64,000 bases of DNA from Macrostomum lignano (taxonomy: Eukaryota). A program made the translations under genes and the position numbers. Shown here piece after piece: positions 2,051 through 59,787 of the stretch. The notes beneath the pieces were generated by a model. That model worked only from the letters and a program-made list of their open reading frames with translations. It had not been told where the DNA came from and made no database searches. The first letter of the stretch is position 1; every line of letters starts with the position of its first letter. The stretch covers positions 496,001 through 560,000 of the forward strand of contig NIVC01000016.1 in assembly GCA_002269645.1 (NCBI GenBank), given 5' to 3'.

Positions 2051-3694
2051 TCATCCTCGCCCTCTTGCTGCCATCCAGGTTGCGCATGAATATGGCTGCA
2101 GGCCCGGAGAAATGCAGCAATCGACATAGTGCCCTCTCTCAGGTGTCGACAGAACAGCTTGGCCTTGATGAACTTGCTGCAGCAGATGTTGCACCTGCTC
2201 TGTATCATGCTGAAGCAGGGTCAGCAGAAGATAGAAATTAAGCGCTTTCTCTCCACGCTTGTTGAGCTGCGCGTGCCAAGCCTCCACGGCATTGTTCGTC
2301 CTTGTGAACCGCTCAAAGACGCAAATGGCATCCCGGTCCCACACAGGGTGCTGTAGCCAGGTTGCACGCACGTATTCCGTTAGCTCTAGAAGGCGCTGAT
2401 TCTCTCCTGCCATTGCAGTGCAGGCTGCAAGGCCATCTAGCATGCAAGGAGCTGGCAGACAAGGAATCGAAAGCAGCATGCGTACTAATAACTTTACCGC
2501 AGGGGAAGTCGCATACTGCACCTGCAATCCAAGAGACTGGACTCGCCTGAAAACAGCCTGGCAGTAATGAAAAAAGCAGCCACGAACTTGGGCTGCTGGA
2601 TAAACTAGCCGAATGGCTTGCCAGGCGGCCGACTCAAAGTCGCAGATAAATTGGACAGGTGCATTACCAGTCAACTCCCATACCTGCCGGAAGCAGGCTT
2701 GGTAGTCAGCCTGAGCCTTACCTGACATGAGAAAGAATGCCAGTGGTACCAGACGCTCTTGATTGTCGCAGCAAATGGCTCCATGAAGGCTGTACAGCTG
2801 CATGAAAGGCGCCTTGACAATGCCGAATGTGCCATCACAGTGCAGAATGCGTTGTGTGGACAGGATCTCCCGTTGTGTTGCAGACATGAAGACAAAGTGC
2901 CGTCCATTTGTCTCTGGAACAGTAACATCCTGCAAATGGAACTCTGGGGGCACGTGCTCAGGATCAACTTGAAAATGGATGTTAGCTGGCTCCGCGGGGC
3001 GGCTTTTTTTACGAGAATAATTGGCATTGCGACTTAAGGAATCTATATTAATCACTGCCTGCACTTCTTGGGGGAGCTCTCTTACTTTCTCCTCAGCGAT
3101 GATGCGAGCAGATTTGAATGGCGCTCGCTTTGCTTCCGCTTTTACCTGAGCTGCAATACGTCGTTTTTTAACTGGCTGATCGACTGGATCGCAGGTGTGC
3201 TCTTTCAAGGCTTCAATGGTTCCGTCTTGTCGCTTGACGACTGAGCCCAGGCATTTCGGTGCAGTTTTGTTGCAACGGTAGTAAGTGTTGCCGTTTCGCC
3301 TGCTCTTGACATGCATCAAGCGGCCAAGATCACGCCTGACGTACTGCACCAGCAAGTCTTTGCCGTGGCTGAATCCAGCACCTGGAAAATGCTCAAAAGC
3401 CTGCGGAGGTGGGCTACGAGGCGGCGCCAACTCTGCTGGAGGCTCGTGAATTGATTCTTCGAGCACAGGTTCAGCGTCAGCGAAATCGGGATACTGAAAT
3501 AAAAACCTCTCTTCCACTTCCACATGAGGGACTGGAAGCAATGGCTCCTCTTGGTCAATAGGCTCACCACCTGGTCCTGATCCTGAAAAGGTTGGCGGCA
3601 CAGTAGCTGCTGGGGCAGCTGAGGGTGCAGATGAAGGCACACCTGTAGTTGGCCTAAGGCATCGGTTTTCACAGCCAGAAAAACTTGCGTACAC
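2051..3694 (-). mobile_element. Mutator-like (MULE) DDE transposase with FLYWCH-type zinc finger
   Basis: 547-aa ORF with YYRC..C..H (GNTYYRCNKTAPKCLG...EHTC), LHCDGTF (D1), ICDFE (D2), GCFFHYCQA (CxxH) and RTNNAVEAWH (E). The usual C-terminus (GTMSIAAFLRACS) lies in a shifted frame. TIRs not identified. Confidence 0.9.
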
Positions 3695-9828: not shown

Positions 9829-12800
9829 TGGAAACTGATAGACAGATGACAGACAGACAGACGGAAACTGATAGACAGACAGGCAGACTGTCAGAAATTC
9901 ACTGCGAGAAGGCAAAGTGAGCCGCCAGTAGAGCGCGACGGGGGTTTAAAAACACCCCTGCCACCCAAGGGGGGGGGGGCAGGCGGCGATGTACAATCAA
10001 CGCGCTGGGCACTAAAGCCGGTTTGTGCACTTTCGCCGCACAAACCAGTCCAATATTCAGAGAGACAGATAAAGAGACAGACAAGCACTAAGGCAGGCAG
10101 GCAGACAGACAGACACTAAGACAGACAGACAGAAATTAGAGAGGCACACAGGCATTCAGGCAGGATCAATACCGCTGCCCCGCCAGATCTGGGACCTGGA
10201 GGCCGGCAAAATCCAGGCCGAATTTGCCGAACTCAGCGCCGGCGCCACCGACCTGAGCTTCCATCCGAGCGTGCTGCTGATGGCGGCCGCCTTCCAGGAC
10301 AAGACGGTCCGCTTCCTTGACCTGGAACTGTTTCAGTCGATCGGTTCCACCCTGGAAACTGATATGCCGACCCCGCCGCGTCGGATCGCCTTCAACCCGG
10401 ACGGCAACTCCGTGTACGCGTCCTGCGGCGACACGCTGAAGATTATCAATGTGGAGCCGACCGCCCTGCTGGAGACCGTGCCGGTGGGTTGGGGCCGCCT
10501 GACCCTGGCTGACCTGGTCGTATCCGCCAGGCACAACCAGCTGATTGGTGAGGACTGGAGAGATTTTCCCGTTTTATCAGAGGAATTCGTGGCTTCTGTG
10601 CAGATATTTCACATTTTCTATCGTCTCGATTCCCTCCGATCAGATACAGAATTCCCTCCGATCAGATGGAGAATTCCCTCAGATTATGAGGAGAATTCCA
10701 TCAGATTATGTGGAGAATTCCGTCAGATTATATGGAGAATTCCCTCAGATTATATGGAGAATTCCCTCAGTCTATATGGAGAATTCCCTCAGACTATAAG
10801 GAAAATTCCTTCAGTTTATATGGAGAATTCCCCTAGATTATATGGAGAATTCCCTTAGTCTTTATGAATAATTCCCTCAGTATATATGAAGAATTCCCTC
10901 AGACTATATGAAAAGTTCCCTCAGACTATATGAAGAATTCCTCTGTGTAATTTACAAAATACACACTTTTTCCTAGCTACTCACCAGTAGCAAGCCAGTC
11001 CCTAGTTAAAAGTGCATTGTATTTTCCAATCCAGGCGCCGGCTTTGCTCACAGCAGCGTCGTGACCTACGTTGTGGACGTGAAGTCCTGCGCACCCTACG
11101 TTACCCCGGCGCCCGCCCAAGCCGCCGCCGTGTTGTCGCCGCCGGACAAAGACCGGCCGACCACCACTTCCGGCAGGAAGTCTTTCAACCAGCCGGAGCC
11201 CAACCTGGTGCCGAAGACGAAAACTTCAAAGAAAAAAGCCGCGCTGGCTGGCGGCGCCGGCGCGGCCTCAGTCGATGAGGAGTCCAGCGAGATGCAAATT
11301 CACGACCCGGAGGCCTACAATGACATTTTCGCGCCTAAACGGGCGCTTCGACGCTCGCCATCGCCGCCGTCGTCTTCGTCTGGCGCCGGCGCCGCCGCCT
11401 CGCGGCCAGCCCACGCGTTCGCAGCCGCGGCCGCCAAGCCATTCACCCCGCCGACTAAGGAGAGTCCGACTAAGCCGCCTGATGGTCAGTGCCTATCATG
11501 TTCCGTGCGCTCTTCATTTTTAGCCACTTTTCTAGCGCCTGTTTGGTGCGCAAATAATACTACTTACAGTAGCGTAAAGTAGACTGGCAACCAGTTAGCC
11601 ATAAATTGTTAGTAATCCTGGTGAGGCTGATTGACAGCCAGTGAGGTGAGGCTGATTGACAGCCAGTGAGGTGAAGCTGATTGACAGCCAGTGAGGTGAA
11701 GCTGATTGACAGCCAGTGAGGTGAAGCTGATTGACAGCCAGTGAGGTGAAGCTGATTGACAGCCAGTGAGGTGAAGCTGATTGACAGCCAGTGAGGTGAA
11801 GCTGATTGACAGCCAGTGAGGTGAAGCTGATTGACAGCCAGTGAGGTGAGGCTGATTGACAGCCAGTGAGGTGAGGCTGATTGACAGCCAGTGAGGTGAG
11901 GCTGATTGACAGCCAGTGAGGTGAAGCTGATTGACAGCCAGTGAGGTGAGGCTGATTGACAGCCAGTGAGGTGAGGCTGATTGACAGTCAGTGAGGTGAG
12001 GCTGATTGACAGTCAGTGAGGTGAGGCTGATTGACAGCCAGTGAGGTGAGGCTGATTGACAGCCAGTGAGGTGAGGCTGATTGACAGCCAGTGAGGTGAG
12101 GCTGATTGACAGTCAGTGAGGTGAGGCTGATTGACAGCCAGTGAGGTGATTGACAGCTAGTCAGATGCTCAGATGCTGATTGACAGCTCTAATTAACAAG
12201 CTCAAACAATTGTAATTATCATCTCAGCAGGCGATCAGCGCCGCGCCGCGCCAGAGCCGGCCTCGCCGCCTCCCCAGCCGGAGCCCCGACAGCCGCCGCC
12301 ACAACCGTCGCCGCCGCAGCAGCAGCCACCGCCGACCAGAGACCGAGCCCGTAGCCGCGAACGTCGGGCCGAGGCGGCCGCGGCGGCTGTTACCCCGACG
12401 CCGCGGAATAACGGCGGCGCCCCAGCGGCCGTGTCGGTCTCCGTGTCGGACTTCCTGCCGGTAAGTCCAATACCTTTGTCCTTGGATGAAGAATTGTTAC
12501 TTTTAATTTACCTAGATAAGTAAAGTCCAGCTGAATACCAAGGATTCTGAGAAGTGCTAAACATTATAAGAAATCTCACTTATAAAGCAATCTCAATGAG
12601 AATTCTAAGAAATATCAATTAGAATTCTAGGAACTAGCAATTAGGATTCTAAGAAATATCTATGAGAGTTCTAAAAAAATCTGGGTAAGGATTCTGGGAA
12701 TTCCCTATGAGGATTCTGAGAAATATCAATGAGGGTTCTAAGAAATATCTATGAGGTTTCTAAGAAATATGAGGGTTCTAAGAAATCTCAATGGGGATTC

Positions 12801-14694
12801 TAAGAAATATCTATGAGGATTCTAAGAAATATGAGGTTTCTAAGAAATCTCAATTTGGATTCTAAGAAATATCTATGAGGGTTCTAAGAAATCTCAATTT
12901 GGATTCTAAGAAATATCTATGAGGGTTCTACTTGACGATCCTATAAAGTCCTCGTTTTTATTGAAGATACTTATTGTGTCCCATACTCAGCTTTTGTTCT
13001 GCGTTTTCAGCCATTGCGTCTCCTCATCAAAGTCACCTGAGCTTCTGCTCTGTAACAAAACCATTTACACTGCTGAAGTATTTTTATTATGTATGACAAT
13101 AATTTAAATTTATTGCCAATATAGTCGCATTCAGTTACAATTAGATCTCTTCAATTCAATCAATACTTTGAAACTGGATGCTAATTAGTTAACTGGTGAA
13201 GGCATGCATTGCCGGTCATACGAGTATTTTGTCCGCAACATTATTTCAATGCCACACAATATTGTCTTGAAAAGTTTATGAGCACTGGCTTAAGTGTCTT
13301 GTCCATGACTGTGAACTCTGTGACTGGCTCTGAACACTATGTGACCGTGAACAGTATGACTGTAACCGTGAACAGTATGGATATGTCCGTGAACACTATG
13401 ATTGTATCGAACAGAATGACTGTGACCGTGAACAGTATGGATATGTCCGTGAACACTATGATTGTATCGAACAGAATGACTGTGTCCGTGAACACTATGG
13501 ATGTGACCGTGTAAAATATTACTGACTGTGAACGCTGTGACTGACAGGAATCATTGTGACTTTAAACACAATGACTGTGATCGTGAACAGTATGACTGTG
13601 ACCGTGAACAGTATGGATATTTCCGTGAACACTATGATTGTACCGAACAGAATGACTGTGACCGTGAACAGTATGGATATGTCCGTGAACACTATGATTG
13701 TACCGAACAGAATGACTGTGACCGTGAACAGTATGGATATGTCCGTGAACACTATGATTGTACCGAACAGTATGACTGTGACCGTGAACAGTATGGATAT
13801 GTCCGTGAACACTATGATTGTATCGAACAGAATGACTGTGTCCGTGAACAGTATGGATATGTCCGTGAACACTATGATTGTACCGAACAGAATGACTGTG
13901 ACCGTGAACAGTATGGATATGTCCGTGAACAGTATGGATATGTCCGTGAACACTATGGATATGTCCGTGAACACTATGATTGTATCGAACAGAATGACTG
14001 TGTCCGTGAACACTATGGATGTGACCGTGTAAAATATTACTGACTGTGAACGCTGTGACTGACAGGAATCATTGTGACTTTAAACACAATGACTGTGATC
14101 GTGAACAGTAAACTTCACTATTCTCATCGGCAGCAGCAGCAGCAGCAGCCACCGCAACAGCCCGCCGAGTCAGACGAGGACCTGGTGTCGAAGTTCCGAC
14201 ACCCGCACCAGTCCTTCATGTCGGTGATTGGCGCCAGGGAGCGGCATCTGCGCCGAGTCCGGTCCATGTGGTCAGCTGACACGGTCAAGACTGCGGTAGA
14301 CTGCGCCCTGCTCATCCAAGACTCAGCTGTGCTCATCGACCTGTTGAACGTGCTGACGGCCAACCAGTCGCTGTGGACTCTGGACATCTCGGCGGCTCTG
14401 CTGCCGGCAATCCGCGACCTGTTTAACAGCAAGCACGCCAGCTACGTGGAGACCGGCGCGACCGCCGCGCTGCTGGTGCTGCGCCAGTTCTCAACTCTGA
14501 TCAAGAGCACTCTGTCTGCGCACGGCCTATCGCCCGGGGTGGATCTGAGCAGAGAGGACCGGGCGCAGCGCTGTCGGGTGTGCTACGATTGTTTCATGCA
14601 GATCAGCTCCGCCCTGGCCTCGCCGGACACTCTGTCCAAGGCCGGACAGACTGGCAGAGAGCTGAGGATGTTCCTGCTGCAGTTGCAGCTCTAG
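8522..14694 (+). CDS. KATNB1: Katanin p80 WD40 repeat-containing subunit B1; exons 8522-8874, 9366-9491, 10187-10547, 11035-11484, 12231-12460, 14134-14694; first short exon not located
   Basis: All exons have AG/GT boundaries with consistent phases. WD40 repeats (ECVAH...[45 protein letters not shown]), a Pro-rich linker, and a C-terminal katanin con80 domain ([17 protein letters not shown]). Stop TAG at 14692-14694. Confidence 0.93.
8885..9305. repeat. 32-bp intronic minisatellite (GCAGTGCGGCTTGCTGAGG[G/C]ATCAGTTTGATT), about 13 copies
   Basis: Fills KATNB1 intron 8875-9365. Confidence 0.92.
9604..9890. repeat. (GACA)n microsatellite in KATNB1 intron
   Basis: Direct inspection. Confidence 0.9.
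10635..10945. repeat. About 22-bp intronic minisatellite (GGAGAATTCCCTCAGATTATAT)n
   Basis: Direct inspection. Confidence 0.85.
11618..12165. repeat. 25-bp intronic minisatellite (GTGAGGTGA[G/A]GCTGATTGACAGCCA), about 21 copies
   Basis: Direct inspection. Confidence 0.92.
12540..12925. repeat. Degenerate about 21-bp repeat (GGATTCTAAGAAATATCTATGA-like)
   Basis: Direct inspection. Confidence 0.75.
13340..14108. repeat. 60-bp intronic minisatellite with a 518-bp higher-order duplication
   Basis: Lines 13621-13800 align in register at 60 bp. The unique spacer GTGTAAAATATTACTGACTG... recurs at 13503 and 14021. Confidence 0.9.
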
Positions 14695-21910: not shown

Positions 21911-23094
21911 GCATGTTTTGATATAGCTTAGTATAATTATTTTATTTTCATAGAAAGTAGCAAAGCTAGAGATAGAGATGTGTATTTTAATTTCTTTCTA
22001 GACTTATGCAAAGTAAAAAATTTACTTTTACTTTTGTTATATATGGCCTTTTTGTTGTGACTGTTACATATATGGCCATTTGGATGGTACCCCCTTTTTG
22101 GCAAAGCCCTAATTTAAAAATGTTGTCTAATCTAATATATATAGAAATTAGACAACATATTTTTTGGATTCTAATCATATTCTTATAATCTTAATACCAT
22201 AGGACCCTAGTGAAATTTAAATACATATTTTATCTAATCTTAAAAGAATTTTGATCCTAGTTTATCTTTACTTCTAATTTTTAACTATATCAATATCAAG
22301 ATGCACCTTAAAGTTTATTGTTGCATTTACCAATTGAATACAAGGAATTAATACACTGTTAGTTAATTTGTCAAGAACTTTTTGTTTATTAATATTTATA
22401 GAAAGTCATTTTTACCGTGATAAATTATTTAGGCTTACAAGTTGTATATTTAGTTGTAGTTTTTAGAAACCTATCATAAAACTTAACTAATGTAAATTAT
22501 TTGTATATTTTAAATCATTCAAGATTAACTCTATCCTAGTATATAGCTAATATTATTTAGAGTTCTGCTATACCTATGGTTATGGCAATTGGAAGTTAGC
22601 AGATTTGTAAACTTTAAGGTTGAAAACAGCTATGAATATGGTTATTGGCCTAGGAATATACATTTCCCATATTTATATTGCCACCCAATAACTGAGACTT
22701 AATATATCTGTATTCCAATATTTAAATTTTATTCAAGCAGGTTACAAAGATGCATACATATTAGATCAAAATAAAATTATTTTTTATTTTTATGTTTTAA
22801 TATTTAATATTTAATAATATTTAATTTTCTATAATACATTATTTCATTATAAATGACACCTAGACTAACAAGTATAAAACATTATCTTTATTAATTTTAA
22901 CAAAATGACAAACTTTATCTTAGGCAATACAGAAAAAGTCAATTCGGAAAATAGATGTTAGTATTAAATATAAGACTAATTTACCAATATAAAAATATAG
23001 ATCAATTTTCGCCATTGTTACATTGCATTCCATTTACCTACTGTTAGATTATTACACAAATCCCCTATGCTCGGATTTGCCCCACTCCTCCCAG

Positions 23095-25045
23095 ACGTCC
23101 ACGTATTTGGCGAGCTCCTCAGCGATCCCCGACTTGCCTGTCTGGAGGCGGAGGCGCCGGCAGCCCACCAGCTGCTGCGGCTGTTCGCCTACGGCACCTA
23201 CGCTGACTACGCCGCCACCGCAGCCCCCAGCTCAGCGCTGAGCCCGCGGCAGCTGCGCAAACTTCGCCGCCTCAGCGTTGTGCAGGCGGCTCGCACCCAG
23301 CGCAGCCTCGCCTATGCCAGCCTGCTGACCAGCCTGGGTCTGGACAGCGTGCCAGAGCTCGAGTCCCTGCTGGCCGAGATGATCACTATGGGCCTGTTTC
23401 AGGGCAAGCTGGACCAGCGCGACCAGCTGCTGCAGGTGAGGAGTGCGCGGATTAACAGTTTTTATTGTCTGTGGATCTCCGGTGCCCATGGCGATTTTGG
23501 TTTCAGGATTGAACTCTGAAGCCTCCGAGAGTCACCTCACATCCCACATCCTCTATGGGAATCGCCCCATCACCTATGAGAATCGCCTCATCCACTATGA
23601 GAACCACCCCATCCCTATGAGAATATCCCATCCCTATGAGAATATCCCATCCCTATGAGAATATCCCATCCCTATGAGAATATCCCATCCCTATGAGAAT
23701 ATCCCATCCCTATGAGAATCTCCCATCCCTATGAGAATCGCCTCATCCACTATGAGAACCACCCCATCCCTATGAGAATATCCCATCCCTATGAGAATAT
23801 CCCATCCCTATGAGAATCGGGATGGGATATTCTCATATTCTCACTATGAGAACCACCCCATCCCTATGAGAATCTCCCATCCCTATGAGAATCGCCCCTA
23901 TCCCTATGAGAATCTCCCATCCCTATGAGAATCCCCCATCCCTATGAGAATCACCCCATCCCTATGAGAATCCCCCATCCCTATGAGAAGAATCACCCCA
24001 TCCCTATGAGAATCCCCCATCCCTATGAGAATCACTCCATTCCTATGAGAATCCCCCATCCCTATGAGAATCACCCTATCCCTATGAGAATCCCCCATCC
24101 CTATGAGAATCACTCCATTCCTATGAGAATCCCCCATCCCTATGAGAATCACCCTATCCCTATGAGAGTCGCCTTATACCCTGTGAGAATCGTCTCATAC
24201 CCTGTGAGAATCGTCTCATCCCCTGTAAGAATCGTCCCATCACTATGAGAGTCGCCCCATCACTATTAGAATCGCCCCATCACTATGAGAATCGCCCCAT
24301 CACTATGAGAGTCGCCCCATCCTTATGAGAATCGTCTCATCCCCTGTAAGAATCGTCCCATCACTATGAGAGTCGCCCCATCACTATTAGAATCGCCCCA
24401 TCACTATGAGAATCGCCCCATCACTATGAGAATCGCCCCATCACTATGAGAGTCGCCCCATCACTATGAGAATCACCCCATCACTATGAGAATCGCCCCA
24501 TCACTATGAGAATCGCCCCATTACTATGAGAGTCGCTCCATCCTTATGAGAGTCGCCCCATCCCCTGTAAGAATCGCCCCAGCCCCTATTAAAATTGTTT
24601 CCCTCTATGAGAATCGTCTCATCCCCTGTAAGAGTCGCCCCATCCCCTGAGAATTGCCAATAAAATCCTGCAGTCCCTACCGCCACCCGCCCTGCCGCAG
24701 GTGTACAGCTGCATGGGCCGGGACGTGCCGCCCGAAGAGCTGCCCAGCCTAGTGGCAGCCCTGGAGGCCTGGTCTGAGGCCTGCCGCCAGTCGCTGGGCC
24801 TGGTGTGCTCCGAGATGGAGACGGCCGAGGCCAGGCACGCGCAGGCCCAGCAGGCCAGGCGCCAGGTGGAGGAGCGAGTCGAGGCCGAGCGGGTCAAGGC
24901 GCTCGCCCAGCGGGAGGCGGCCACCGCTGCCACCGCCGCCCCTTCCGGTCACGATAGCGCCGAGTACGGCTCCTCCGGCGCCGGGGCTGGCGGCGCCAGC
25001 TCGATGAAGTCGCTAAAAAAAGTGCGACTGTCCGCCAAGAAGTGA
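23095..25045 (+). CDS. COPS7: COP9 signalosome complex subunit 7 (PCI domain); exons 23095-23435 and 24701-25045; N-terminal exon not located
   Basis: VHVFGELL...LLRLFAYGTYADY...KLRRLSVV...GKLDQRDQLLQV|YSCMGRD...W matches the CSN7 pattern (VYVFGELL, FAYGTYADY, LDQRNQ, GRD). Canonical splice sites. Confidence 0.92.
23545..24650. repeat. About 20-21-bp intronic minisatellite (CCCCATC[C/A]CTATGAGAATC)n
   Basis: Fills the COPS7 intron. Confidence 0.9.
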
Positions 25046-28043: not shown

Positions 28044-31000
28044 CTAGAGGATCCGGTATTTCTGCCCGCTGCTGCCGCTCCCGCTGAGCACCTTCTGCTG
28101 GCGGCTTCTCAGTTTAGCCAGAGCCATCGTGAGCAGCAGAACAAGCAACAGTACGATGCAGGCCATCGCGCACACAGCCGCCAACATCACCCAGTTGTAC
28201 AGGGACAGCAGCAGCTCTTTGTCCGACTTGGCATGGCCGGCGCTACCGCAAGGCTGTCGGGTGGTTAATGGTGGCTTAAAAACTTTGGCTTCTGTTAGAT
28301 AAGCTGCTTACAGATTATGGCTGCGATACAGGTAGGTGCAGCCATGCAGTACGTGTCTAACAGGTCGAACCATATTCCAGAGGGTGACACACTGTCTAAC
28401 AGGTGGAACCATATTCCAGAGGGTGACACACACTGTCTAACAGGTGGAACCATATTCCAGAGGGTGACACACACTGTCTAACAGGTGGAACCATATTCCA
28501 GAGGGTGACACACACTGTCTAACAGGTGGAACCATATTCCAGAGGGTGACACACACTGTCTAACAGGTGGAACCATATTCCAGAGGGTGACACACTGTCT
28601 AACAGGTGGAACCATATTCCAGAGGGTGACACACACTGTCTAACAGGTCAAACCATATTCCAGAGGGTGACACACACTGTCTAACAGGTGGAACCATATT
28701 CCAGAGGGTGACACACACTGTCTAACAGGTGGAACCATATTCCAGAGGGTGACACACACTGTCTAACAGGTGGAACCATATTCCAGAGGGTGACACACAC
28801 TGTCTAACAGGTCAAACCATATTCCAGAGGGTGACACACACTGTCTAACAGGTGGAACCATATTCCAGAGGGTGACGCACACTGTCTAACAGGTGAAATT
28901 CCATATTCCAGAGGGTGACACACACTGTCTAACAGGTGAAATTCCATATTCCAGAGGGTGACACACACTGTCTAACAGGTGAAATTCCATATTCCAGAGG
29001 GTGACACACACTGTCTAACAGGTGGAACCATATTCCAGAGGGTGACACACACTGTCTAACAGGTGGAACCATATTCCAGAGGGTGACACACACTGTCTAA
29101 CAGGTGGAACCATATTCCAGAGGGTGACGCACACTGTCTAACAGGTGGAACCATATTCCAGAGGGTGACACACACTGTCCAACAGGTGGAACCATATTCC
29201 AGAGGGTGACACACACTGTCTAACAGGTCAAACCATATTCCAGAGGGTGACACACACTGTCCAACAGGTGGAACCATATTCCAGAGGGTGACGCACACTG
29301 TCTAACAGGTGGAACCATATTCCAGAGGGTGACACACACTGTCTAACAGGTGGAACCATATTCCAGAGGGTGACACACACTGTCTAACAGGTGGAACCAT
29401 ATTCCAGAGGGTGACACACACTGTCTAACAGGTGGAACCATATTCCAGAGGGTGACACACACTGTCTAACAGGTGGAACCATATTCCAGAGGGTGACGCA
29501 CACTGTCTAACAGGTGGAACCATATTCCAGAGGGTGACACACACTGTCTAACAGGTGGAACCATATTCCAGAGGGTGACACACACTGTCTAACAGGTGGA
29601 ACCATATTCCAGAGGGTGACACACACTGTCTAACAGGTGGAACCATATTCCAGAGGGTGACGCACTGTCTACTAAGTTGGAAATAACAGCAAATGGTTTA
29701 ATTAACTGAAGCACTGAACAGCTGAACAACCAATAATAGCTCGTAGCAACTGCAATACCAAACCAATTGCCCCAGTCAGCATCACCTGGTCGTGGATCAC
29801 GGCCGCTTTAAACAGACTGTGCAGTCCGACGAGGCCGATGCAAGCGATGCCGCCTCCCCGGTGATACTGCGTCTCTGCCCGGTTCATATCGCCAATGCAC
29901 GTGTGCGGCTTGGCATCAGTCTGGGCAGTCACGCACCACTTCGAATGGTCCTTTGTAGACTTAAACTGCGTCTGGTTCCCGATGCGAACATCGAGCACTT
30001 TGGTGACATTGTAGCGCCTGTTGCATGTCGAATTCAGCAGCTCTTTGCCGTGCTGCCAGGTTTCTACCTGCGTAAAACACAAAACGCAAAACTACCGATT
30101 ACATGTAAAACAAAAAATTTACTAAAAATTTTGTAAAACTGCACTTCTTCTTTTGTAGAAGTATTGAAGTATAGAAGTATCTAAAAAACACATTTTTTTA
30201 CAAATCAGTACAAAATATCTGATAATTCTCTACGTGCAACCACGGACAACTAAGGAAGAATTAGGACACTATACAGTTGGTTTCTTAGAAATGAACCGGA
30301 AGGAACATATATTTGTAGTATCACTGGTGTATTTACTACTCTAGAGCTGAATGGGGTTTGGCCATAGACTAATTCAGTCGAGAAAAGTCCGCTTTTTCTA
30401 TAATAACATGTACAAATGCGCTAGCGATCCTGCTAATCCGCTGGATTCCCTACCCGCCTTAAGATCATTTCTAAGAAAATCGAGTGCAACTGTCCTTTTA
30501 CTGCAATTTTCGATGCGTGCAACTCAGATCCGGAGTAAAGTGAGGTTTGGCCTTTATTTAATTTTCTATACATGTAAAACGCGAGATTCACGTCATTATA
30601 CAACGGGTCATTTCCAGTGATCCCACTGGATGTGATCCCACAGAAGCAATATACCTGAATGTTCGACTGAAGCTGACCAGCCAACAGGTAAGAATACAGG
30701 TCCTGCTTCAGGTGCGGAGACTTGGCCAGGTGCATCACGGACAGGCCACCGGAGGTCACCAGCTTGACAGTGGAATTCATCAAAGCCTTCGGTGGCTGCT
30801 TCCGTTTCTTCAGATCTGCCCAGCTGGGCCAGGCGGCCTCGGCGGCGGGGCTGACGCTGAGGCTGTAGAGGTCCGGGTGCGAGACGAACAGCTGGCTGCC
30901 GATGATGTTGGCCATCTTTGCGCTGTCCACGGTCAGGCAAAGGAAGCTCTGGCCGTATTTCATCCCAGTGTCCGGGTACTCGTAGCGATGCAGGCTCATG

Positions 31001-31410
31001 TTCGGGAACTTTGGCACGCTGTGGATCAGCCAGAAGCCTTTCTGGCCAGACTTCAAAGCGACGAGCCCTTTCATGTGGCCGAACGCGCTGCTGCCGATGC
31101 TGCTGCTGTTGTTGTCCTCTGGCGGCTCGTCGTTGTACGCGGCCAGAACATCGGCGGCGGCATTGGAGCCGGCCTGCAGGACCTGGCTGACGGTGCTGAA
31201 CACGGGGCCATCCCGGGTGATGTCGCAGCCATCCGGCTGAATCCAGGCGGTTGACGAATTCGAGCTGACGTAGGCGTAGTGTCCGGAGTGCGGCTGCTTC
31301 AGCAGAGCGAACCAGTCCAGAGGAAAGCCATCGGCATCCAAGCACTGGAACTCGGCTGATGCAGCATGAACCAGCCAGGCTGATAGCGATAAAACAAATT
31401 TGTAGTTCAT
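28044..31410 (-). CDS. DNASE2: Deoxyribonuclease II (acid DNase, PLD superfamily) with C-terminal transmembrane anchor; exons 31410-30655, 30067-29786, 28253-28044; 415 aa
   Basis: Signal peptide, CLDADGFPLDWF, both catalytic HxK motifs (GHMKG, DHSKW), WLIHSVPKFP, YGQSFLC and CIGDMNR...RGGG. Phase-0 splicing to exon 3 (PCG...TM...KYRIL*) restores the conserved terminal QPC. Confidence 0.93.
28355..29670. repeat. 41-bp minisatellite (GACACACACTGTCTAACAGGTGGAACCATATTCCAGAGGGT), about 32 copies
   Basis: Fills DNase II intron 2. Confidence 0.93.
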
Positions 31411-31938
31411 ATTGTTCACACCGCTGTAGTGCGTGGGTGTAGAGCTTTATTTCAGTTATTATATATAGTATTTAGTATACTTATCAGTCAGAAAGCTTGC
31501 AGAGAGCGCTAATTAGCATGACTAATACAGCAACTGCGGCTCAGTGCATGCAGCGCGAAGGGGTGGGGGGCTACGACGGAAATTGCAGCTTCAATTTTTC
31601 ACTCTTGCTTTAAAATACTCGTTGTTTATTGGCTGGCCTTAAAATATCAGATACAGTGCATGTGTCTTCGTGCGCACGATTCACTTAATACGCCTGCTTG
31701 CTTCCATCAGTTATACATGTTGTATGTACATTTGTATCCATTGTCAAGTAGTGTCTGTTTTTATAGCTCTCTTTTAACAGAAGCAAAGCTTTAAGCACAG
31801 ATCTTACAGATAGTACACATTTATTTATACAAGCCCTTCAAGCTTCACCCATCTTACATTAACATTACAAGAGCGTATGTACGCATTTGGTAGGCAAATT
31901 CTGCTTCATATAGCTTGAAGACGGCGCCTTACTGGTAA

Positions 31939-39522: not shown

Positions 39523-41501
<1,979 letters not shown>

Positions 41502-41794: not shown

Positions 41795-42567
41795 TTTGTC
41801 TGTCTGTAGGCGCTACATGCTGTAAACTGTATCTGTCTGTAGGCACTGTATGCTGTAAACTGTATCTGTCTGTAGGCACTGTGTGCTGTAAACTGTATTT
41901 GTCTGTAGGCACTGTGTGCTGTAAACTGTATTTGTCTGTAGGCACTGTATGCTGTAAACTGTATTTGTCTGTAGGCACTGTGTGCTGTAAACTGTATTTG
42001 TCTGTAGGCACTGTGTGCTGTAAACTGGATCTGTCTGTAGGCACTGTGTGCTGTAAACTGTATTTGTCTGTAGGCACTGTGTGCTGTAAACTGTATTTGT
42101 CTGTAGGCACTGTATGCTGTAAACTGTATTTGTCTGTAGGCACTGTGTGCTGTAAACTGTATTTGTCTGTAGGCACTGTGTGCTGTAAACTGTATTTGTC
42201 TGTAGGCACTGTGTGCTGTAAACTGTATTTGTCTGTAGGCACTGTGTGCTGTAAACTGGATCTGTCTGTAGGTACTGTGTGCTGTAAACTGTATTTGTCT
42301 GTAGGCACTGTGTGCTGTAAACTGTATTTGTCTGTAGGCACTGTGTGCTGTAAACTGTATTTGTCTGTAGGCACTGTATGCTGTAAACTGTATTTGTCTG
42401 TAGGCACTGTGTGCTGTAAACTGTATTTGTCTGTAGGCACTGTGTGCTGTAAACTGGATCTGTCTGTAGGCACTGTGTGCTGTAAACTGTATTTGTCTGT
42501 AGGCACTGTATGCTGTAAACTGTATCTGTCTGTAGGCACTGTGTGCTGTAAACTGTATTTGTCTGTA
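41795..42567. repeat. 33-bp minisatellite (CTGTAAACTGTATTTGTCTGTAGGCACTGTGTG), about 23 copies
   Basis: Direct inspection. Confidence 0.93.
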
Positions 42568-42851: not shown

Positions 42852-44224
42852 TCAGCCCATTCTGAAATTCAATGGTTCATTTATCATATTACTGCCAGTA
42901 CGGTGCAACAAATATGTTGAAAATAAGTTTTAAGCTCTACTATTGGAACCTGATTCGTTCTCGGAGAAATCTGTATCTTGCGTACGACTGCCTGAGCAAC
43001 TCCATCAGCCGCTCAGCTTCTGACTGCCCTCTGCGACCGCGGATAAACAGCTCGCTGAAATAAAAAGGTGTGAGCAGGTCTCAGGTGTTAGAGTGAGCAG
43101 GTCTCAGGTGTGAGAGTGAGCAGGTCTCAGCTGTGAGAGTGAGCAGGTCTCAGGTGTGAGAGTGAGCAGGTCTCAGGTGTGAGAGTGAGCAGGTCTCAGC
43201 TGTGAGAGTGAGCAGGTCTCAGGTGAGAGAGTGAGCAGGTCTCAGGTGTGAGAGTGAGCAGGTCTCAGGTGAGAGAGTGAGCAGGTCTCAGGTGAGAGAG
43301 TGAGCAGGTCTCAGCTGTGAGAGCAGGTCTCAGGTATGAGACTGAGCAGGTATCAGGTGAGAGAGTGAGCAGGTCTCAGGTGTGAGAGTGAGCAGGTCTC
43401 AGTTGTGAGACTGAGCAGGTATCAGGTGTGAGAGTGAGCAGGTCTCAGGTGTGAGACTGAGCAGGTCTCAGCTGTGAGAGTGAGCAGGTCTCAGCTGTGA
43501 GAGTGAGCAGGTCTCAGGTGAGAGAGTGAGCAGGTCTCAGGTGAGAGAGTGAGCAGGTCTCAGGTGTGAGAGTGAGCAGGTCTCAGCTGTGAGACTGAGC
43601 AGGTCTCAGGTGTGAGAGTGAGCAGGTCTCAGGTGTGAGAGTGAGCAGGTCTCAGCTGTGAGAGTGAGCAGGTCTCAGCTGTGAGAGTGAGCAGGTATCA
43701 GGTGTGAGAGTGAGCAGGTATCAGGTGTGAGAGTGAGCAGGTCTCAGGTGTGAGAGTGAGCAGGTCTCAGGTGTGAGAGTGAGCAGGTCTCAGGTGAGAG
43801 AGTGAGCAGGTCTCAGGTGTGAGAGTGAGCAGGTCTCAGGTGTGAGAGTGAGCAGGTCTCAGGTGAGAGAGTGAGCAGGTCTCAGGTGAGAGAGTGAGCA
43901 GGTCTCAGGTATGAGAGTGAGCAAGTCTCAAGTGTGAGAGTGAGCAGGTCTCAGGTATGAGAGTGAGCAAGTCTCAAGTGTCAGAGTGAGCACGCCTCAG
44001 GTTTGAGAGTTGAAGCGACTATTTTAGCACTGTTTGAATGAGCCATTAATTTACCCAGTTGCCATGGCAACGCCGCTGTCCCTGAGCGACATCGCACGAG
44101 CCATCCCAGCTGCCGGTTCCGCCCTGAACGCCAGCTGGGGTGCCGGCTGGCCCAGCAGCAGCAGCCACAGCAGCAGACGCATCGGAAGCAGAGCCGCATT
44201 GAATCGGTGACCAGAGCGGGCCAT
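42852..44224 (-). CDS. NPY-superfamily-like neuropeptide precursor 4 (...YARYRFLRERIRM-amide); exons 44224-44055, 43054-42950, 42861-42852; 94 aa
   Basis: Hydrophobic signal segment (LLPMRLLLWLLLLG), RGRR cleavage site, two phase-2 introns; ATC AG|gttcca...tttcag|A ATG GGC TGA gives RIRMG*. Confidence 0.8.
43068..43990. repeat. 23-bp minisatellite (GAGTGAGCAGGTCTCAGGTGTGA)n in neuropeptide gene 4 intron 1
   Basis: Direct inspection. Confidence 0.92.
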
Positions 44225-44528
44225 GCTGGAACTGAAGCAGATTCGGGTTTTGTTATTCGGGTTGCATGTAATTTCAGTTTTACAGTCTTTGCTTATGAAA
44301 TGAAAATTAAAACACTTAAATTTGCTTTTTTGAAGCAAGTGTAGCTGTGAGATCAGCAGTGTCCTCTTGTTTTATATTTTCATTAATTCATCAGCAGCGT
44401 TCTACCACATCGAGTTTGTTGCAATTTGGGATTTCTGTAATAGCAGGAAGTTGCAATCAGTGGTCGGTCTCGAGTACAAAAGTTTCCCTGGCTGCACTGG
44501 GTTCCTTCCGGCTTGCTTGGCTCCATCT

Positions 44529-45589
44529 TCAGCCCATGCTGCAATGAGGATCAGGGATATTGATTGACAACTGTGACCCCCGACTTTCCTGTTGGCTTGT
44601 CCGGTTTAATCATCACCTGTTTACTGTGTGAGCACTTTCCTGTCTGCAGTGTAAACACCCTCTGTCTACAGTTTAAACACCCCTGTCTACAGTGTAAACA
44701 CCCCTGTCTACAGTGTAAACACCCCTGTCTACAGTTTAAACACCCCTGTCTACAGTTTAAACACCCCTGTCTACAGTTTAAACACCTTTGTCTACAGTGT
44801 AAACATCCCTGTCTACAGTGTAAACATCCCTGTCTACAGTGTAAACACCCCCTGTCTACAGTGTAAACACCCCTGTCTACAGTTTAAACACCTCTGTCTA
44901 CAGTGTAAACATCCCTGTCTACAGTGTAAACATCCCTGTCTACAGTGTAAACACCCCCTGTCTACAGTGTAAACACCTCATGTTCACAGTTTAAACACTC
45001 CTGTTGAAAGTGTAAACACCGCAGCGGCTCTCACCGAATCCGCTGGGTCAAGAAGTCATTCTTGGCTTTGAAGTCAGCCAGCTTGGCCAGCAGACGGGCC
45101 GCATTGAAGTCATTCGAGCCGCTGCGCTTCCATTCGGCCACGCTGTTTTTATTTTAAAATACATAAACTCTCATTAGACTACTATAACTGAGTAGTGCAA
45201 AACAAATTACGCTCTTAAATATCAGTTTCTAAAAGACAAAAAATGAAACTGAAAACTCAAACTGAAACAAAACCCCATGATTTCTATAATTTGAAGGTTT
45301 TGGGCAGCCCCAGTCGCTAGGCATCATGAAATGGGCTGGCTCAGAAGTACTAAAAATGACCAAAAATCGCTGAACCCCGCCTCAAAGGCCGAAGACAGAG
45401 CAGGACTCACTTGAAATTCGCCTGCTCGGCGGGATGGTAGGAGCCGTTGGGCACCGCCAGGTCGGCCTCGGAAGGCGCATAGCGATAGGCCGCGTCGCGA
45501 GGCCGTGAGGGCGCCGCCTGAGCCAGCTGGAGGCTCAGCAGCAGCAGCAGCACCAGCGGCGCAGCTTTGCAGGTTCCTTTGACGGGCAT
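44529..45589 (-). CDS. NPY-superfamily-like neuropeptide precursor 3 (...KNDFLTQRIRM-amide); exons 45589-45411, 45142-45035, 44538-44529; 98 aa
   Basis: Signal peptide (AAPLVLLLLLSLQLAQA), KR cleavage site, two phase-2 introns; ATT CG|gtgag...ttgcag|C ATG GGC TGA gives RIRMG*. Confidence 0.83.
44645..45020. repeat. 21-bp minisatellite (TGTCTACAGT[G/T]TAAACACCCC)n in neuropeptide gene 3 intron 2
   Basis: Direct inspection. Confidence 0.9.
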
Positions 45590-45675: not shown

Positions 45676-46268
45676 GGACAAGAGAGGGAGGGACAAGAGA
45701 CCAGGACAAGGACAAGGACAAGGACAAGGGACAAGAGGAGGGACTCCCTCTCTTGTCCCTCCCTCTCTTGTCCCTCCCTCTCTTGTCCCTCCCTCTCTTG
45801 TCCCTCCCTCTCTTGTCCCTCCCTCTCTTGTCCCTCCCTCTCTTGTCCCTCCCTCTCTTGTCCCTCCCTCTCTTGTCCCTCCCTCTCTTGTCCCTCCCTC
45901 TCTTGTCCCTCCCTCTCTTGTCCCTCCCTCTCTTGTCCCTCCCTCTCTTGTCCCTCCCTCTCTTGTCCCTCCCTCTCTTGTCCCTCCCTCTCTTGTCCCT
46001 CCCTCTCTTGTCCCTCCCTCTCTTGTCCCTCCCTCTCTTGTCCCTCCCTCTCTTGTCCCTCCCTCTCTTGTCCCTCCCTCTCTTGTCCCTCCCTCTCTTG
46101 TCCCTCCCTCTCTTGTCCCTCCCTCTCTTGTCCCTCCATCTCTTGTCCCTCCCTCTCTTGTCCCTCCCTCTCTTGTCCCTCCCTCTCTTGTCCCTCCCTC
46201 TCTTGTCCCTCCCTCTCTTGTCCCTCCCTCTCTTGTCCCTCCCTCTCTTGTCCCTCCTTCTCTTGTCC
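45676..46268. repeat. 15-bp minisatellite (CTCTTGTCCCTCCCT)n preceded by an inverted block of the same unit
   Basis: Direct inspection. Confidence 0.92.

Positions 46269-50002: not shown

Positions 50003-59787
<9,785 letters not shown>

What the first reader, a model, noticed from the sequence alone, without database searches (positions are those of the whole stretch)
42852..45589. Tandem pair encoding an unusual FLxxRIRM-amide peptide type
Seen: predicted mature peptides are SGSNDFNAARLLAKLADFKAKNDFLTQRIRM-NH2 (31 aa, after KR) and GQSEAERLMELLRQSYARYRFLRERIRM-NH2 (28 aa, after RR). They share an amphipathic helix-like core and FLxxRIRM. Both genes have identical architecture (two phase-2 introns; Gly directly before the TGA with no dibasic site). 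Established: NPY/NPF peptides normally end in RxRF or RxRY. Inference: a terminal Met with conserved RIR in two otherwise divergent paralogues suggests selection for a distinct ligand class and possibly a distinct NPY-type GPCR. I do not recognise a described RIRM-amide family, but could not search for one.
Basis: partly seen in the sequence, partly recalled or inferred. Interest (0 to 1): 0.8.

Follow-up and report, generated by a model that had tools for sequence, protein, structure and literature searches.

The report
Flatworm RxRM-amide peptide hormone genes
Two neighbouring small genes of the flatworm Macrostomum lignano, plus a third gene elsewhere in its genome, encode secreted peptides ending in Arg-Ile/Val-Arg-Met-amide; they have the exon layout of neuropeptide Y/F genes but no other sequence likeness to them, so they look like an unnamed, very divergent offshoot of that hormone family.

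Summary
The window is Macrostomum lignano (GenBank contig NIVC01000016.1). On the minus strand lie two three-exon genes. All four introns are GT..AG and phase 2. Each gene ends in a 10-nt exon N-ATG-GGC-TGA. Gene A (98 aa) is identical to the transcript-derived GenBank model BOX15_Mlig030474g1, named only "hypothetical protein". Gene B (94 aa) is unannotated, and its expression is unproven.

I found a third paralogue, C, in three genomic copies. It has the same exon plan and ends ...KAKNDFLTQRVRMG*. The family motif is therefore FLxxR[I/V]RM-amide. Conserved residues are encoded by different codons, which indicates purifying selection.

Assignment to NPY/NPF is only half supported:
- **For:** the family's diagnostic intron is present in all five loci examined, between bases 2 and 3 of the Arg codon before the last residue.
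- **Against:** Pfam PF00159, a C-terminus-anchored profile test and hhalign all find no NPY-like sequence signal. M. lignano also has a canonical ...ARPRF-amide NPF.

Planarian precedents exist: npy-11 ends RPRL-amide, npy-7 ends Gly-stop, and npy-10 has an N-terminal spacer. No description of RIRM- or RVRM-amide peptides was found, and no homologue outside M. lignano. The verdict is a real, moderately interesting new variant. A dedicated receptor remains untested.

The parts
45411..45589 (-). Gene A, coding exon 1 (179 nt). It holds the ATG at 45589, a signal peptide ending AQA|AP, and a divergent propeptide. The exon ends in phase 2 (..TTC AA|gtgagt).
   Evidence: It is identical to GenBank PAA94096.1 / BOX15_Mlig030474g1. 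AlphaFold2 predicts a helix at residues 10-24 and disorder at 26-64.
45143..45410 (-). Gene A, intron 1 (268 nt, GT..AG, phase 2).
45035..45142 (-). Gene A, exon 2 (108 nt). It encodes ..NVAEWKR followed by the mature peptide SGSNDFNAARLLAKLADFKAKNDFLTQRI and the first two bases (CG) of the last Arg codon. The mature-peptide coding part starts at 45123.
   Evidence: A helix is predicted over residues 74-97.
44539..45034 (-). Gene A, intron 2 (496 nt, GTGAGA..AG, phase 2). It splits the Arg codon before the terminal Met, which is the NPY/NPF-type intron position. A 21-bp x18 minisatellite (44639-45020) fills most of it.
   Evidence: The diagnostic intron position is described in PMC7314547 and PMC2953531.
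44529..44538 (-). Gene A, terminal coding micro-exon C|ATG GGC TGA. It supplies the third base of Arg, then Met, the amidation-donor Gly and the stop.
   Evidence: It is included in the transcript-derived GenBank model.
44232..44233 (-). AG acceptor 7 nt upstream of gene B's ATG. UniProt fusion models P0005, P0006 and P0056 use it to join gene A exon 2 in frame to gene B exon 1 (..QRIR-SS-MARSG..). It may be the trans-splice acceptor of gene B; that is an inference.
   Evidence: Trans-splicing and polycistronic precursor transcripts are common in M. lignano (PMC5730564).
44055..44224 (-). Gene B, coding exon 1 (170 nt). The ATG at 44224 has a good context (A at -3, G at +4), and there is an alternative ATG at 44182. 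It encodes the signal peptide ..RLLLWLLLLG and a propeptide, and ends in phase 2 (ACT GG|gtaaat).
   Evidence: In the copy from the other assembly the second Met is Leu while MARSG.. stays in frame (P0056), which favours 44224 as the start.
43055..44054 (-). Gene B, intron 1 (1000 nt, GTAAAT..AG, phase 2). A 23-bp x41 minisatellite (43070-44010) almost fills it.
42950..43054 (-). Gene B, exon 2 (105 nt). It encodes ELFIRGRR followed by the mature peptide GQSEAERLMELLRQSYARYRFLRERI and the first two bases (AG) of the last Arg codon. The mature-peptide coding part starts at 43029.
   Evidence: This exon is in no database protein.
42862..42949 (-). Gene B, intron 2 (88 nt, phase 2, same position in the Arg codon). 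The donor GTTCCA is weak. Unspliced read-through would give ..RERIRFQ-stop.
42852..42861 (-). Gene B, terminal coding micro-exon A|ATG GGC TGA.

Best explanation
The region holds two tandemly duplicated prohormone genes of Macrostomum lignano. They belong to a small family of at least three types: A and B here, and C on other contigs in three copies.

**Predicted processing (inferred).**
1. Each precursor has a signal peptide, a fast-evolving propeptide and a conserved dibasic site (KR or RR).
2. One peptide of 28-31 residues follows, ending FLxxR-[I/V]-R-M-Gly-stop.
3. Signal peptidase removes the signal peptide, and a prohormone convertase cuts after KR/RR.
4. The terminal Gly needs no carboxypeptidase step because it is the last residue. 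Peptidylglycine alpha-amidating monooxygenase converts it to a C-terminal amide.
5. The product is a basic (+3), helix-prone peptide ending in ...R[I/V]RM-NH2. It most likely acts as a neuropeptide or peptide hormone on a G-protein-coupled receptor, with the conserved C-terminal octapeptide as the receptor-contacting part.

**Origin (inferred).** The family most likely descends from an NPY/NPF-type gene. It keeps that family's hallmark phase-2 intron inside the Arg codon preceding the amidated residue, and it keeps the R-x-R-X-amide frame. Its helical core has diverged beyond recognition, and Met replaces the usual Phe or Tyr.

**Shown versus inferred.**
- Shown: the gene structures, the homology of A, B and C, the transcript-derived models for A and C, and the codon pattern of purifying selection.
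- Inferred: the processing, the amidation, neuronal expression, the receptor class, descent from NPY/NPF, and expression of gene B.
For: **Gene models and identity.**
- Gene A equals GenBank BOX15_Mlig030474g1 at 100% identity over the full length.
- The GenBank annotation of this assembly derives from StringTie/TACO RNA-seq transcript assemblies (PMC5730564).

**Paralogue C.**
- It comprises P0008, P0009, P0010, P0054 and P0055.
- Its exon plan is the same, including a 179-nt first coding exon, two phase-2 introns and the micro-exon A|ATGGGCTGA at three loci.

**Selection.**
- A vs C over the last 25 codons: 12 identical, 8 synonymous-only, 5 non-synonymous.
- A vs B: the conserved F, L, R, I and R all use different codons.
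- The propeptides are unalignable while the C-terminal 13 residues of A and C differ only by I/V.

**Link to NPY/NPF.**
- The intron lies between the 2nd and 3rd base of the Arg codon before the last residue. This is the conserved NPY/NPF feature used to assign orthology across phyla (PMC7314547; PMC2953531).
- Planarian precedents are npy-11 RPRL-amide, npy-7 ...RPRYG-stop, and npy-10 with spacer-KR-31-mer.

**Structure.** A helix is predicted for residues 74-97 and the propeptide is predicted disordered.
Against: **No sequence signal links the peptides to NPY/NPF.**
- Pfam PF00159 gives nothing at E<=10.
- The C-terminus-anchored profile gives z = 0.3-1.0, against 4.3-7.1 for all 14 true members.
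- hhalign gives probability 0.2%.
- BLASTP against the canonical M. lignano NPF P0046 gives E=1.5.

**The intron argument is weaker than it looks.**
- The shared intron position could be coincidental.
- Arg codons of the AG|R type resemble proto-splice sites, which makes such a coincidence less unlikely.

**Direct evidence is missing.**
- There is no peptide-level, expression-site or receptor evidence.
- Gene B has no GenBank model, and its exons 2-3 appear in no database protein.
- Gene B's last donor site is weak.
- Older UniProt models skip gene A's micro-exon and fuse A to B.
- No homologue was found outside M. lignano, so conservation across species is unknown.
Confidence: 0.6

Rival explanations
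1. The genes are real amidated-peptide precursor genes, but the family is lineage-specific and unrelated to NPY/NPF. On this view the R-x-R-X-amide ending and the intron in the Arg codon arose by convergence or coincidence.
For: - All sequence-based NPY tests fail, whereas even the atypical Smed npy-11 scores z=5.7 and carries a PF00159 hit.
- M. lignano already has a canonical NPF (P0046).
- C-terminal similarity alone has misled NPY assignments before, as with the echinoderm 'NPY-like' peptides that were reassigned to PrRP (PMC7314547).
Against: - The intron sits at exactly the diagnostic position and phase in all five loci.
- With two introns in about 95 codons, a match of position and phase by chance is roughly 1%. 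It may be a few percent after allowing for proto-splice-site bias. Both figures are my inference.
- The precursor layout (spacer, dibasic site, one 28-31-mer, Gly) matches flatworm NPY-family variants.
Confidence: 0.28
2. Gene B is a silent or decaying duplicate. Only gene A (and gene C) produce peptide, so the 'pair' is one working gene plus a relic.
For: - Gene B has no GenBank model.
- Its exons 2 and 3 are absent from every database protein.
- Its intron-2 donor GTTCCA departs from the consensus.
- Its intron 1 is a 940-bp minisatellite.
Against: - Despite only about 33-42% identity to A, B keeps an open frame across three exons, four GT..AG boundaries in the same phase, the dibasic site and the exact RIRMG-stop.
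- Every conserved residue of the motif is encoded by a different codon than in A. That is conservation at the protein level, not leftover nucleotide identity.
- The GenBank annotation deliberately dropped transcripts overlapping repeats, so B's absence is uninformative.
- B's exon 1 is included in several UniProt gene models.
Confidence: 0.25
3. The products are not signalling peptides. They would instead be secreted cationic helical effector peptides, for example antimicrobial or gland products, which are also often amidated through a C-terminal Gly.
For: - The peptides are rich in Ala, Leu and Lys, carry net charge +3 and are predicted as a single helix.
- No receptor or expression data exist.
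Against: - The helical hydrophobic moment is not above that of shuffled sequences (p = 0.88, 0.26, 0.89). The best 18-residue windows reach only 0.31-0.45.
- The strongest conservation is in the C-terminal octapeptide and the amidation signal, rather than in an amphipathic face.
- The dibasic-site prohormone layout and the NPY-type intron point to a hormone precursor.
Confidence: 0.07

Closest known systems
NPY/NPF superfamily (Pfam PF00159). The nearest members are the expanded flatworm set: Schmidtea mediterranea npy-1 to npy-11, especially the 'atypical' npy-11 (…SRPRL-amide), npy-7 (…GRPRYG-stop) and npy-10 (spacer-KR-31-mer).
   Same: - A phase-2 intron inside the Arg codon preceding the amidated C-terminal residue.
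- The R-x-R-X-Gly ending.
- One peptide of about 30 residues per small precursor (80-105 aa).
- A predicted helical C-terminal half.
- Precedents for a non-aromatic last residue, for Gly directly before the stop, and for an N-terminal spacer with a dibasic site.
   Different: - The last residue is Met, which I did not see in any of the 14 members compared or in the family definitions read.
- Ile or Val replaces the usual Pro or Gln at position -3.
- No Tyr at -10 and -17 in A or C; B has Tyr at -10 only.
- No PF00159 hit, no profile or hhalign signal, and no similarity to M. lignano's own canonical NPF.
- An extra phase-2 intron lies between the propeptide and peptide exons.
Macrostomum lignano canonical NPF (UniProt A0A1I8JDA1; P0046): …EFKEYLKNLRSYMSLIARPRFGKRSDTP
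   Same: - Same species.
- A small precursor with an N-terminal spacer ending in W-D-KR; gene A has W-KR.
- A single amidated peptide with R-x-R-X-Gly.
   Different: - It has the canonical ARPRF-amide ending with Tyr at -10 and -17.
- It has a PF00159 hit.
- GKR and a short C-flanking peptide follow the Gly.
- BLASTP against gene A gives E=1.5.
- Its gene structure could not be retrieved.
PRX-amide / small-cardioactive-peptide-like peptides, e.g. Smed-ppl-1 (YFSPRM-amide, several copies)
   Same: A C-terminal Arg-Met-amide in a flatworm prohormone.
   Different: - Those are 6-residue peptides in several tandem copies, each flanked by GKR.
- They have Pro at -3.
- They have no long helix, and no terminal micro-exon is known for them.
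- The M. lignano family has a single 28-31-mer with Ile or Val at -3.
C. elegans FLP-27, assigned to NPY/NPF mainly by gene structure
   Same: It is a precedent for calling a sequence-divergent peptide NPY/NPF-type because the intron interrupts the codon of the C-terminal Arg (PMC7314547).
   Different: From my own knowledge, FLP-27 still ends in RF-amide. The M. lignano peptides do not.

Membership tests
NPY/NPF superfamily | An intron between the 2nd and 3rd base of the Arg codon immediately preceding the C-terminal amidated residue | tested here: met
   - Gene A: CG|gtgaga…ag|C ATG.
- Gene B: AG|gttcca…ag|A ATG.
- Gene C (three copies): CG|gtgcgt…ag|A ATG.
- Sources. The feature is defined in PMC7314547 and PMC2953531.
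NPY/NPF superfamily | C-terminal R-x-R-[F/Y]-amide | tested here: not met
   The endings are RIRM-Gly (A, B) and RVRM-Gly (C). R-x-R is kept but the aromatic residue is replaced by Met. Smed npy-11 (RPRL) is a published exception that is still placed in the family.
NPY/NPF superfamily | Sequence match to the family core (PF00159; helix with conserved Tyr at -10 and -17) | tested here: not met
   - Pfam gives no hit at E<=10.
- The anchored profile gives z=0.3-1.0, against 4.3-7.1 in leave-one-out tests of 11 planarian and 3 human members.
- hhalign gives probability 0.2%.
- Only B has Tyr at -10.
NPY/NPF superfamily | A Gly amidation donor after the last residue, and a single long peptide per precursor | tested here: met
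   One 28-31-mer per precursor, with Gly then stop. Gly directly before the stop also occurs in Smed npy-7.
NPY/NPF superfamily | The peptide directly follows the signal peptide and is followed by a C-flanking peptide | tested here: not met
   A propeptide of about 40 residues and a dibasic site precede the peptide, and there is no C-flanking peptide. This feature is variable in flatworms: npy-3, -4, -7 and -10 and the M. lignano NPF have spacers.
NPY/NPF superfamily | Activates an NPY/NPF-type GPCR | not testable with these tools
   This needs receptor expression assays.
PRX-amide / SCP-like peptides (e.g. Smed-ppl-1) | Short peptides in several copies ending in P-R-X-amide | tested here: not met
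   The family has a single long peptide with Ile or Val, not Pro, at -3. Comparison is with ppl-1.
Cationic amphipathic helical effector peptides | A helical hydrophobic moment clearly above that expected from composition | tested here: not met
   The hydrophobic moment at 100 degrees is 0.08, 0.31 and 0.08 for A, B and C. It is not above shuffles (p=0.88, 0.26, 0.89).

The most novel reading that the evidence does not exclude
The R-[I/V]-R-Met-amide peptides are a macrostomid ligand class that split from the NPF gene. On this reading they lost both the aromatic 'message' residue and the PP-fold core, and they co-evolved with their own receptor alongside the canonical NPF system. That would be a natural example of an NPY/NPF-type ligand-receptor pair escaping the RF/RY-amide rule.
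Probability: 0.3. Interest if true: 0.55.

Novelty: new variant of a known kind. Interest (0 to 1): 0.42.

Why it matters
Macrostomum lignano is the flatworm model in which stable transgenesis is available, and NPY-family peptides control germline maturation in planarians (npy-8; PMC2953531). An unnamed three-type peptide family with NPY-type gene structure but a Met-amide end offers three things:
- **Candidates.** It gives concrete candidates for the neuropeptide catalogue of this species.
- **A test case for assignment.** It shows how far intron position can be trusted for family assignment once sequence signal is gone.
- **A structure-activity question.** One can ask whether the aromatic C-terminal residue of NPY/NPF ligands is replaceable when the receptor co-evolves.

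Practically, gene B is missing from the GenBank annotation. Older UniProt models fuse A and B or give them misleading domain-derived names such as 'SPX domain-containing' and 'Alginate_lyase domain-containing'.

Tried and rejected
- **Literature searches.** Full-text searches for RIRMamide, IRMamide, RVRMamide, RIRMG, RVRMG, FLTQRIRM and FLTQRVRM returned only OCR noise or bacterial sequences. A search for 'RMamide' plus 'flatworm' only matched 'formamide'. The two most relevant flatworm neuropeptide surveys could not be read. These are Koziol et al. 2016 (Int J Parasitol), which has no PMC copy, and, as I recall it from my own knowledge, McVeigh et al. 2009 (Int J Parasitol), which I did not look for in the library. 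'Not described' therefore holds only for the searchable library.
- **More members in the window.** A scan for R-x-(split Arg) donors paired with X-Gly-stop or X-Gly-dibasic acceptors found only A, B and repeat noise.
- **A B-like partner next to gene C.** None lies within 10 kb at any of three loci.
- **Homologues outside M. lignano.** An exhaustive HMMER search of 1.84 billion representatives and two word-indexed searches found none. Short divergent peptides would be missed, and other Macrostomum species seem not to be in these databases.
- **Gene structure of the canonical M. lignano NPF.** It is not on record.
- **Other families, rejected from memory only.** I considered CRH/DH44/ELH-type, secretin/VIP/PHM-type (PHM also ends in Met-amide), tachykinin/bombesin (Met-amide) and neuromedin U (FLFRPRN-amide). 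None shares the gene structure or more than a terminal residue or two.
- **Fold search.** I did not run a fold search on the AlphaFold model, because a single helix at pLDDT about 57 overall would give meaningless matches.
Full report
**1. What is in the sequence**

Read on the minus strand, the region 42852-45589 holds two small three-exon genes.

Gene A:
- Exons are 45589-45411, 45142-45035 and 44538-44529.
- The product is MPVKGTCKAAPLVLLLLLSLQLAQAAPSRPRDAAYRYAPSEADLAVPNGSYHPAEQANFNVAEWKRSGSNDFNAARLLAKLADFKAKNDFLTQRIRMG-stop (98 aa).

Gene B:
- Exons are 44224-44055, 43054-42950 and 42861-42852. An alternative ATG lies at 44182.
- The product is MARSGHRFNAALLPMRLLLWLLLLGQPAPQLAFRAEPAAGMARAMSLRDSGVAMATGELFIRGRRGQSEAERLMELLRQSYARYRFLRERIRMG-stop (94 aa).

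Features shared by both genes:
- All four introns are GT..AG and phase 2.
- The last coding exon is 10 nt long (N-ATG-GGC-TGA).
- The last intron splits the Arg codon that precedes the terminal Met.

Evidence that this is not chance:
- The 12-mer AG-N-ATGGGCTGA occurs only at these two places in the 64 kb, against about 0.045 expected.
- No other exon pair of this design is in the window.
- A and B are homologous. BLASTP gives E=1e-4 over the mature region. Anchored at the C-terminus, 11 of 28 residues are identical, which 0 of 100,000 shuffles reached.

Minisatellites fill intron 2 of A and intron 1 of B and flank both genes.

**2. Organism and transcript support**

- The window is Macrostomum lignano, assembly GCA_002269645.1, contig NIVC01000016.1.
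- Protein A is identical over its full length to GenBank PAA94096.1, 'hypothetical protein BOX15_Mlig030474g1'.
- The GenBank annotation of this assembly was made from a genome-guided RNA-seq transcriptome (StringTie, TACO, a de novo assembly, TransDecoder ORFs). Transcripts overlapping repeat annotations were filtered out (PMC5730564).
- Gene A's three-exon model, including the micro-exon, therefore rests on transcript structure.
- Gene B is absent from GenBank. Given the repeat filter, that says little, because its first intron is a minisatellite.
- B's exons 2-3 are in no database protein. B's exon 1 appears in several older UniProt models.
- Models P0005, P0006 and P0056 join A's exon 2 to an acceptor 7 nt upstream of B's ATG, in frame.
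- About 7% of M. lignano transcripts are polycistronic precursors with trans-splice sites. I therefore read that acceptor as a possible trans-splice site of B and the fusions as read-through artefacts. This is an inference.

**3. A third paralogue**

- An exhaustive HMMER search and a second word-indexed search found gene C.
- C comprises UniProt A0A1I8I379 and A0A1I8F280, and GenBank BOX15_Mlig025860 g1, g2 and g3, on three contigs.
- Its product is MPLPQSTPAVFA[V/I]ALLALTLFAASNTAEAAPLSRLSESQLLEAAELLDELDHAG[L/F]EDSVSGRMRLVRRAG[M/V]AKRGGSFDAAKVLAKLAELKAKNDFLTQRVRMG-stop.
- On locus L002 the exons are 12800-12978 (179 nt, the same length as A's first coding exon), 13067-13192 and 13657-13666. 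Both introns are phase 2 and the micro-exon is A|ATGGGCTGA.
- The same micro-exon is present at all three C loci.
- The family motif is therefore FLxxR[I/V]RM-Gly-stop, preceded by a conserved dibasic site.

**4. Selection**

- Between A and C, the last 25 codons show 12 identical, 8 synonymous-only and 5 non-synonymous differences.
- Between A and B, each conserved motif residue (F, L, R, I, R) uses a different codon.
- The propeptides have diverged almost completely, while the C-terminal 13 residues of A and C differ only by I/V.
- This is the usual signature of a processed bioactive peptide whose C-terminus is the functional part.
- It also argues that B has been kept by selection. An intact 94-codon frame, four in-phase splice boundaries and the exact ending would not be expected in a relic at this level of divergence.

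**5. Is it NPY/NPF?**

Two published criteria define the family:
- the RxR[F/Y]-amide end together with the PP-fold-type core;
- an intron between bases 2 and 3 of the codon of the Arg before the last residue. This intron is conserved from vertebrates to flatworms, molluscs, annelids, arthropods and nematodes, and it has been used to assign C. elegans FLP-27 (PMC7314547; PMC2953531).

The intron criterion is met in all five loci. The sequence criteria are not:
- Pfam PF00159 gives nothing at E<=10.
- I built a C-terminus-anchored profile from the 11 planarian NPY-family peptides (sequences from the paper's supplement) plus human NPY, PYY and PP.
- That profile scores A at z=0.3-0.4 and B at z=0.9-1.0. 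Every true member scores 4.3-7.1 when left out, including npy-11.
- hhalign of the two family profiles gives 0.2% probability.
- M. lignano has a canonical NPF (…YMSLIARPRFGKR, with a PF00159 hit). It shows no similarity to A (E=1.5).

My conclusion is that the family works like, and probably descends from, an NPY/NPF-type gene. I do not file it as a demonstrated member. An unrelated origin with a coincident intron remains possible, at about 0.28.

**6. How unusual is it?**

- npy-11, labelled 'atypical neuropeptide Y', ends in RPRL-amide and has the same intron.
- The npy-7 precursor ends …GRPRYG with no dibasic site.
- npy-3, npy-4 and npy-10, and the M. lignano NPF, have an N-terminal spacer ended by a dibasic site.

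New here, as far as I could check:
- the Met-amide end on an NPY-type gene frame;
- Ile or Val at -3;
- the complete loss of the family core.

An Arg-Met-amide end does occur in flatworms, in the unrelated short multi-copy ppl-1 peptides (YFSPRM-amide).

**7. Structure and physical properties**

- AlphaFold2, run with a shallow alignment, predicts the signal-peptide helix, a disordered propeptide and one helix over residues 74-97 of precursor A at pLDDT about 70-77.
- The hydrophobic moment is not higher than in shuffled sequences. 'Helical' is therefore reasonable, but 'amphipathic' is not demonstrated.
- Net charge is +3 for all three peptides.

**8. Limits**

- There are no expression, peptide or receptor data.
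- Two key subscription-journal surveys of flatworm neuropeptides were not read. Koziol et al. 2016 has no PMC copy. McVeigh et al. 2009, recalled from my own knowledge, was not looked for.
- The claim of a dedicated receptor is untested.

**9. Verdict**

The finding is real and somewhat broader than reported: three gene types rather than two. It is best described as a new, strongly divergent variant built on the NPY/NPF gene plan. Interest is moderate.

Noticed in passing
window 40000-41501; 41801-42567; 43070-44010; 44639-45020; 45744-46268: The two peptide genes sit among dense micro- and minisatellite arrays. These are (TAGA)n of about 375 copies, a 33-bp unit x23, a 23-bp unit x41 (in intron 1 of gene B), a 21-bp unit x18 (in intron 2 of gene A) and a 15-bp unit x35 (about 150 bp upstream of gene A's ATG). 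At the three gene C loci the distance from the end of exon 2 to the terminal exon ranges from about 190 bp to 1.6 kb.
   Followed up: partly
window 42940-42962 and 45027-45045 (minus strand): If the last intron is not spliced, gene B reads ...RERIRFQ-stop. That is an RxRF ending, but with no Gly for amidation. Gene A reads ...QRIR-stop, using the TGA within its GTGA donor. Gene B's donor GTTCCA is weak.
   Followed up: no
window 44231-44233 (minus strand); proteins P0005, P0006, P0056: UniProt models from the older assembly splice gene A exon 2 in frame to an acceptor 7 nt upstream of gene B's ATG, skipping A's terminal exon. This may be a polycistronic A-B transcript or a trans-splice acceptor. 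In P0004 and P0056, which come from that older assembly, gene B's second Met is Leu and an Ala is Gly.
   Followed up: partly
window 50003-55589 and beyond (minus strand), e.g. ORF 51267-52082: The upstream neighbour of gene A is an 840-aa GenBank gene, and one of its exons has a GDNF/GAS1 domain hit (E=4.6e-7). All three copies of gene C are instead followed, about 1.2 kb downstream, by an 811-aa gene.
   Followed up: no
window 2051-3694 (-), 30433-31419 (-), 23067-23519 (+): Other coding pieces in the window are a MULE transposase ORF (547 aa), a deoxyribonuclease II exon (E=6e-49) and a PCI-domain exon.
   Followed up: no
proteins P0002, P0003, P0056 (UniProt): Automatic UniProt names for variants of precursor A are 'SPX domain-containing', 'Alginate_lyase domain-containing' and 'Alginate_exp domain-containing'. 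I think these names are spurious: these small secreted precursors had no precomputed Pfam domain for P0002 and P0003, and my scan of precursor A found none.
   Followed up: no
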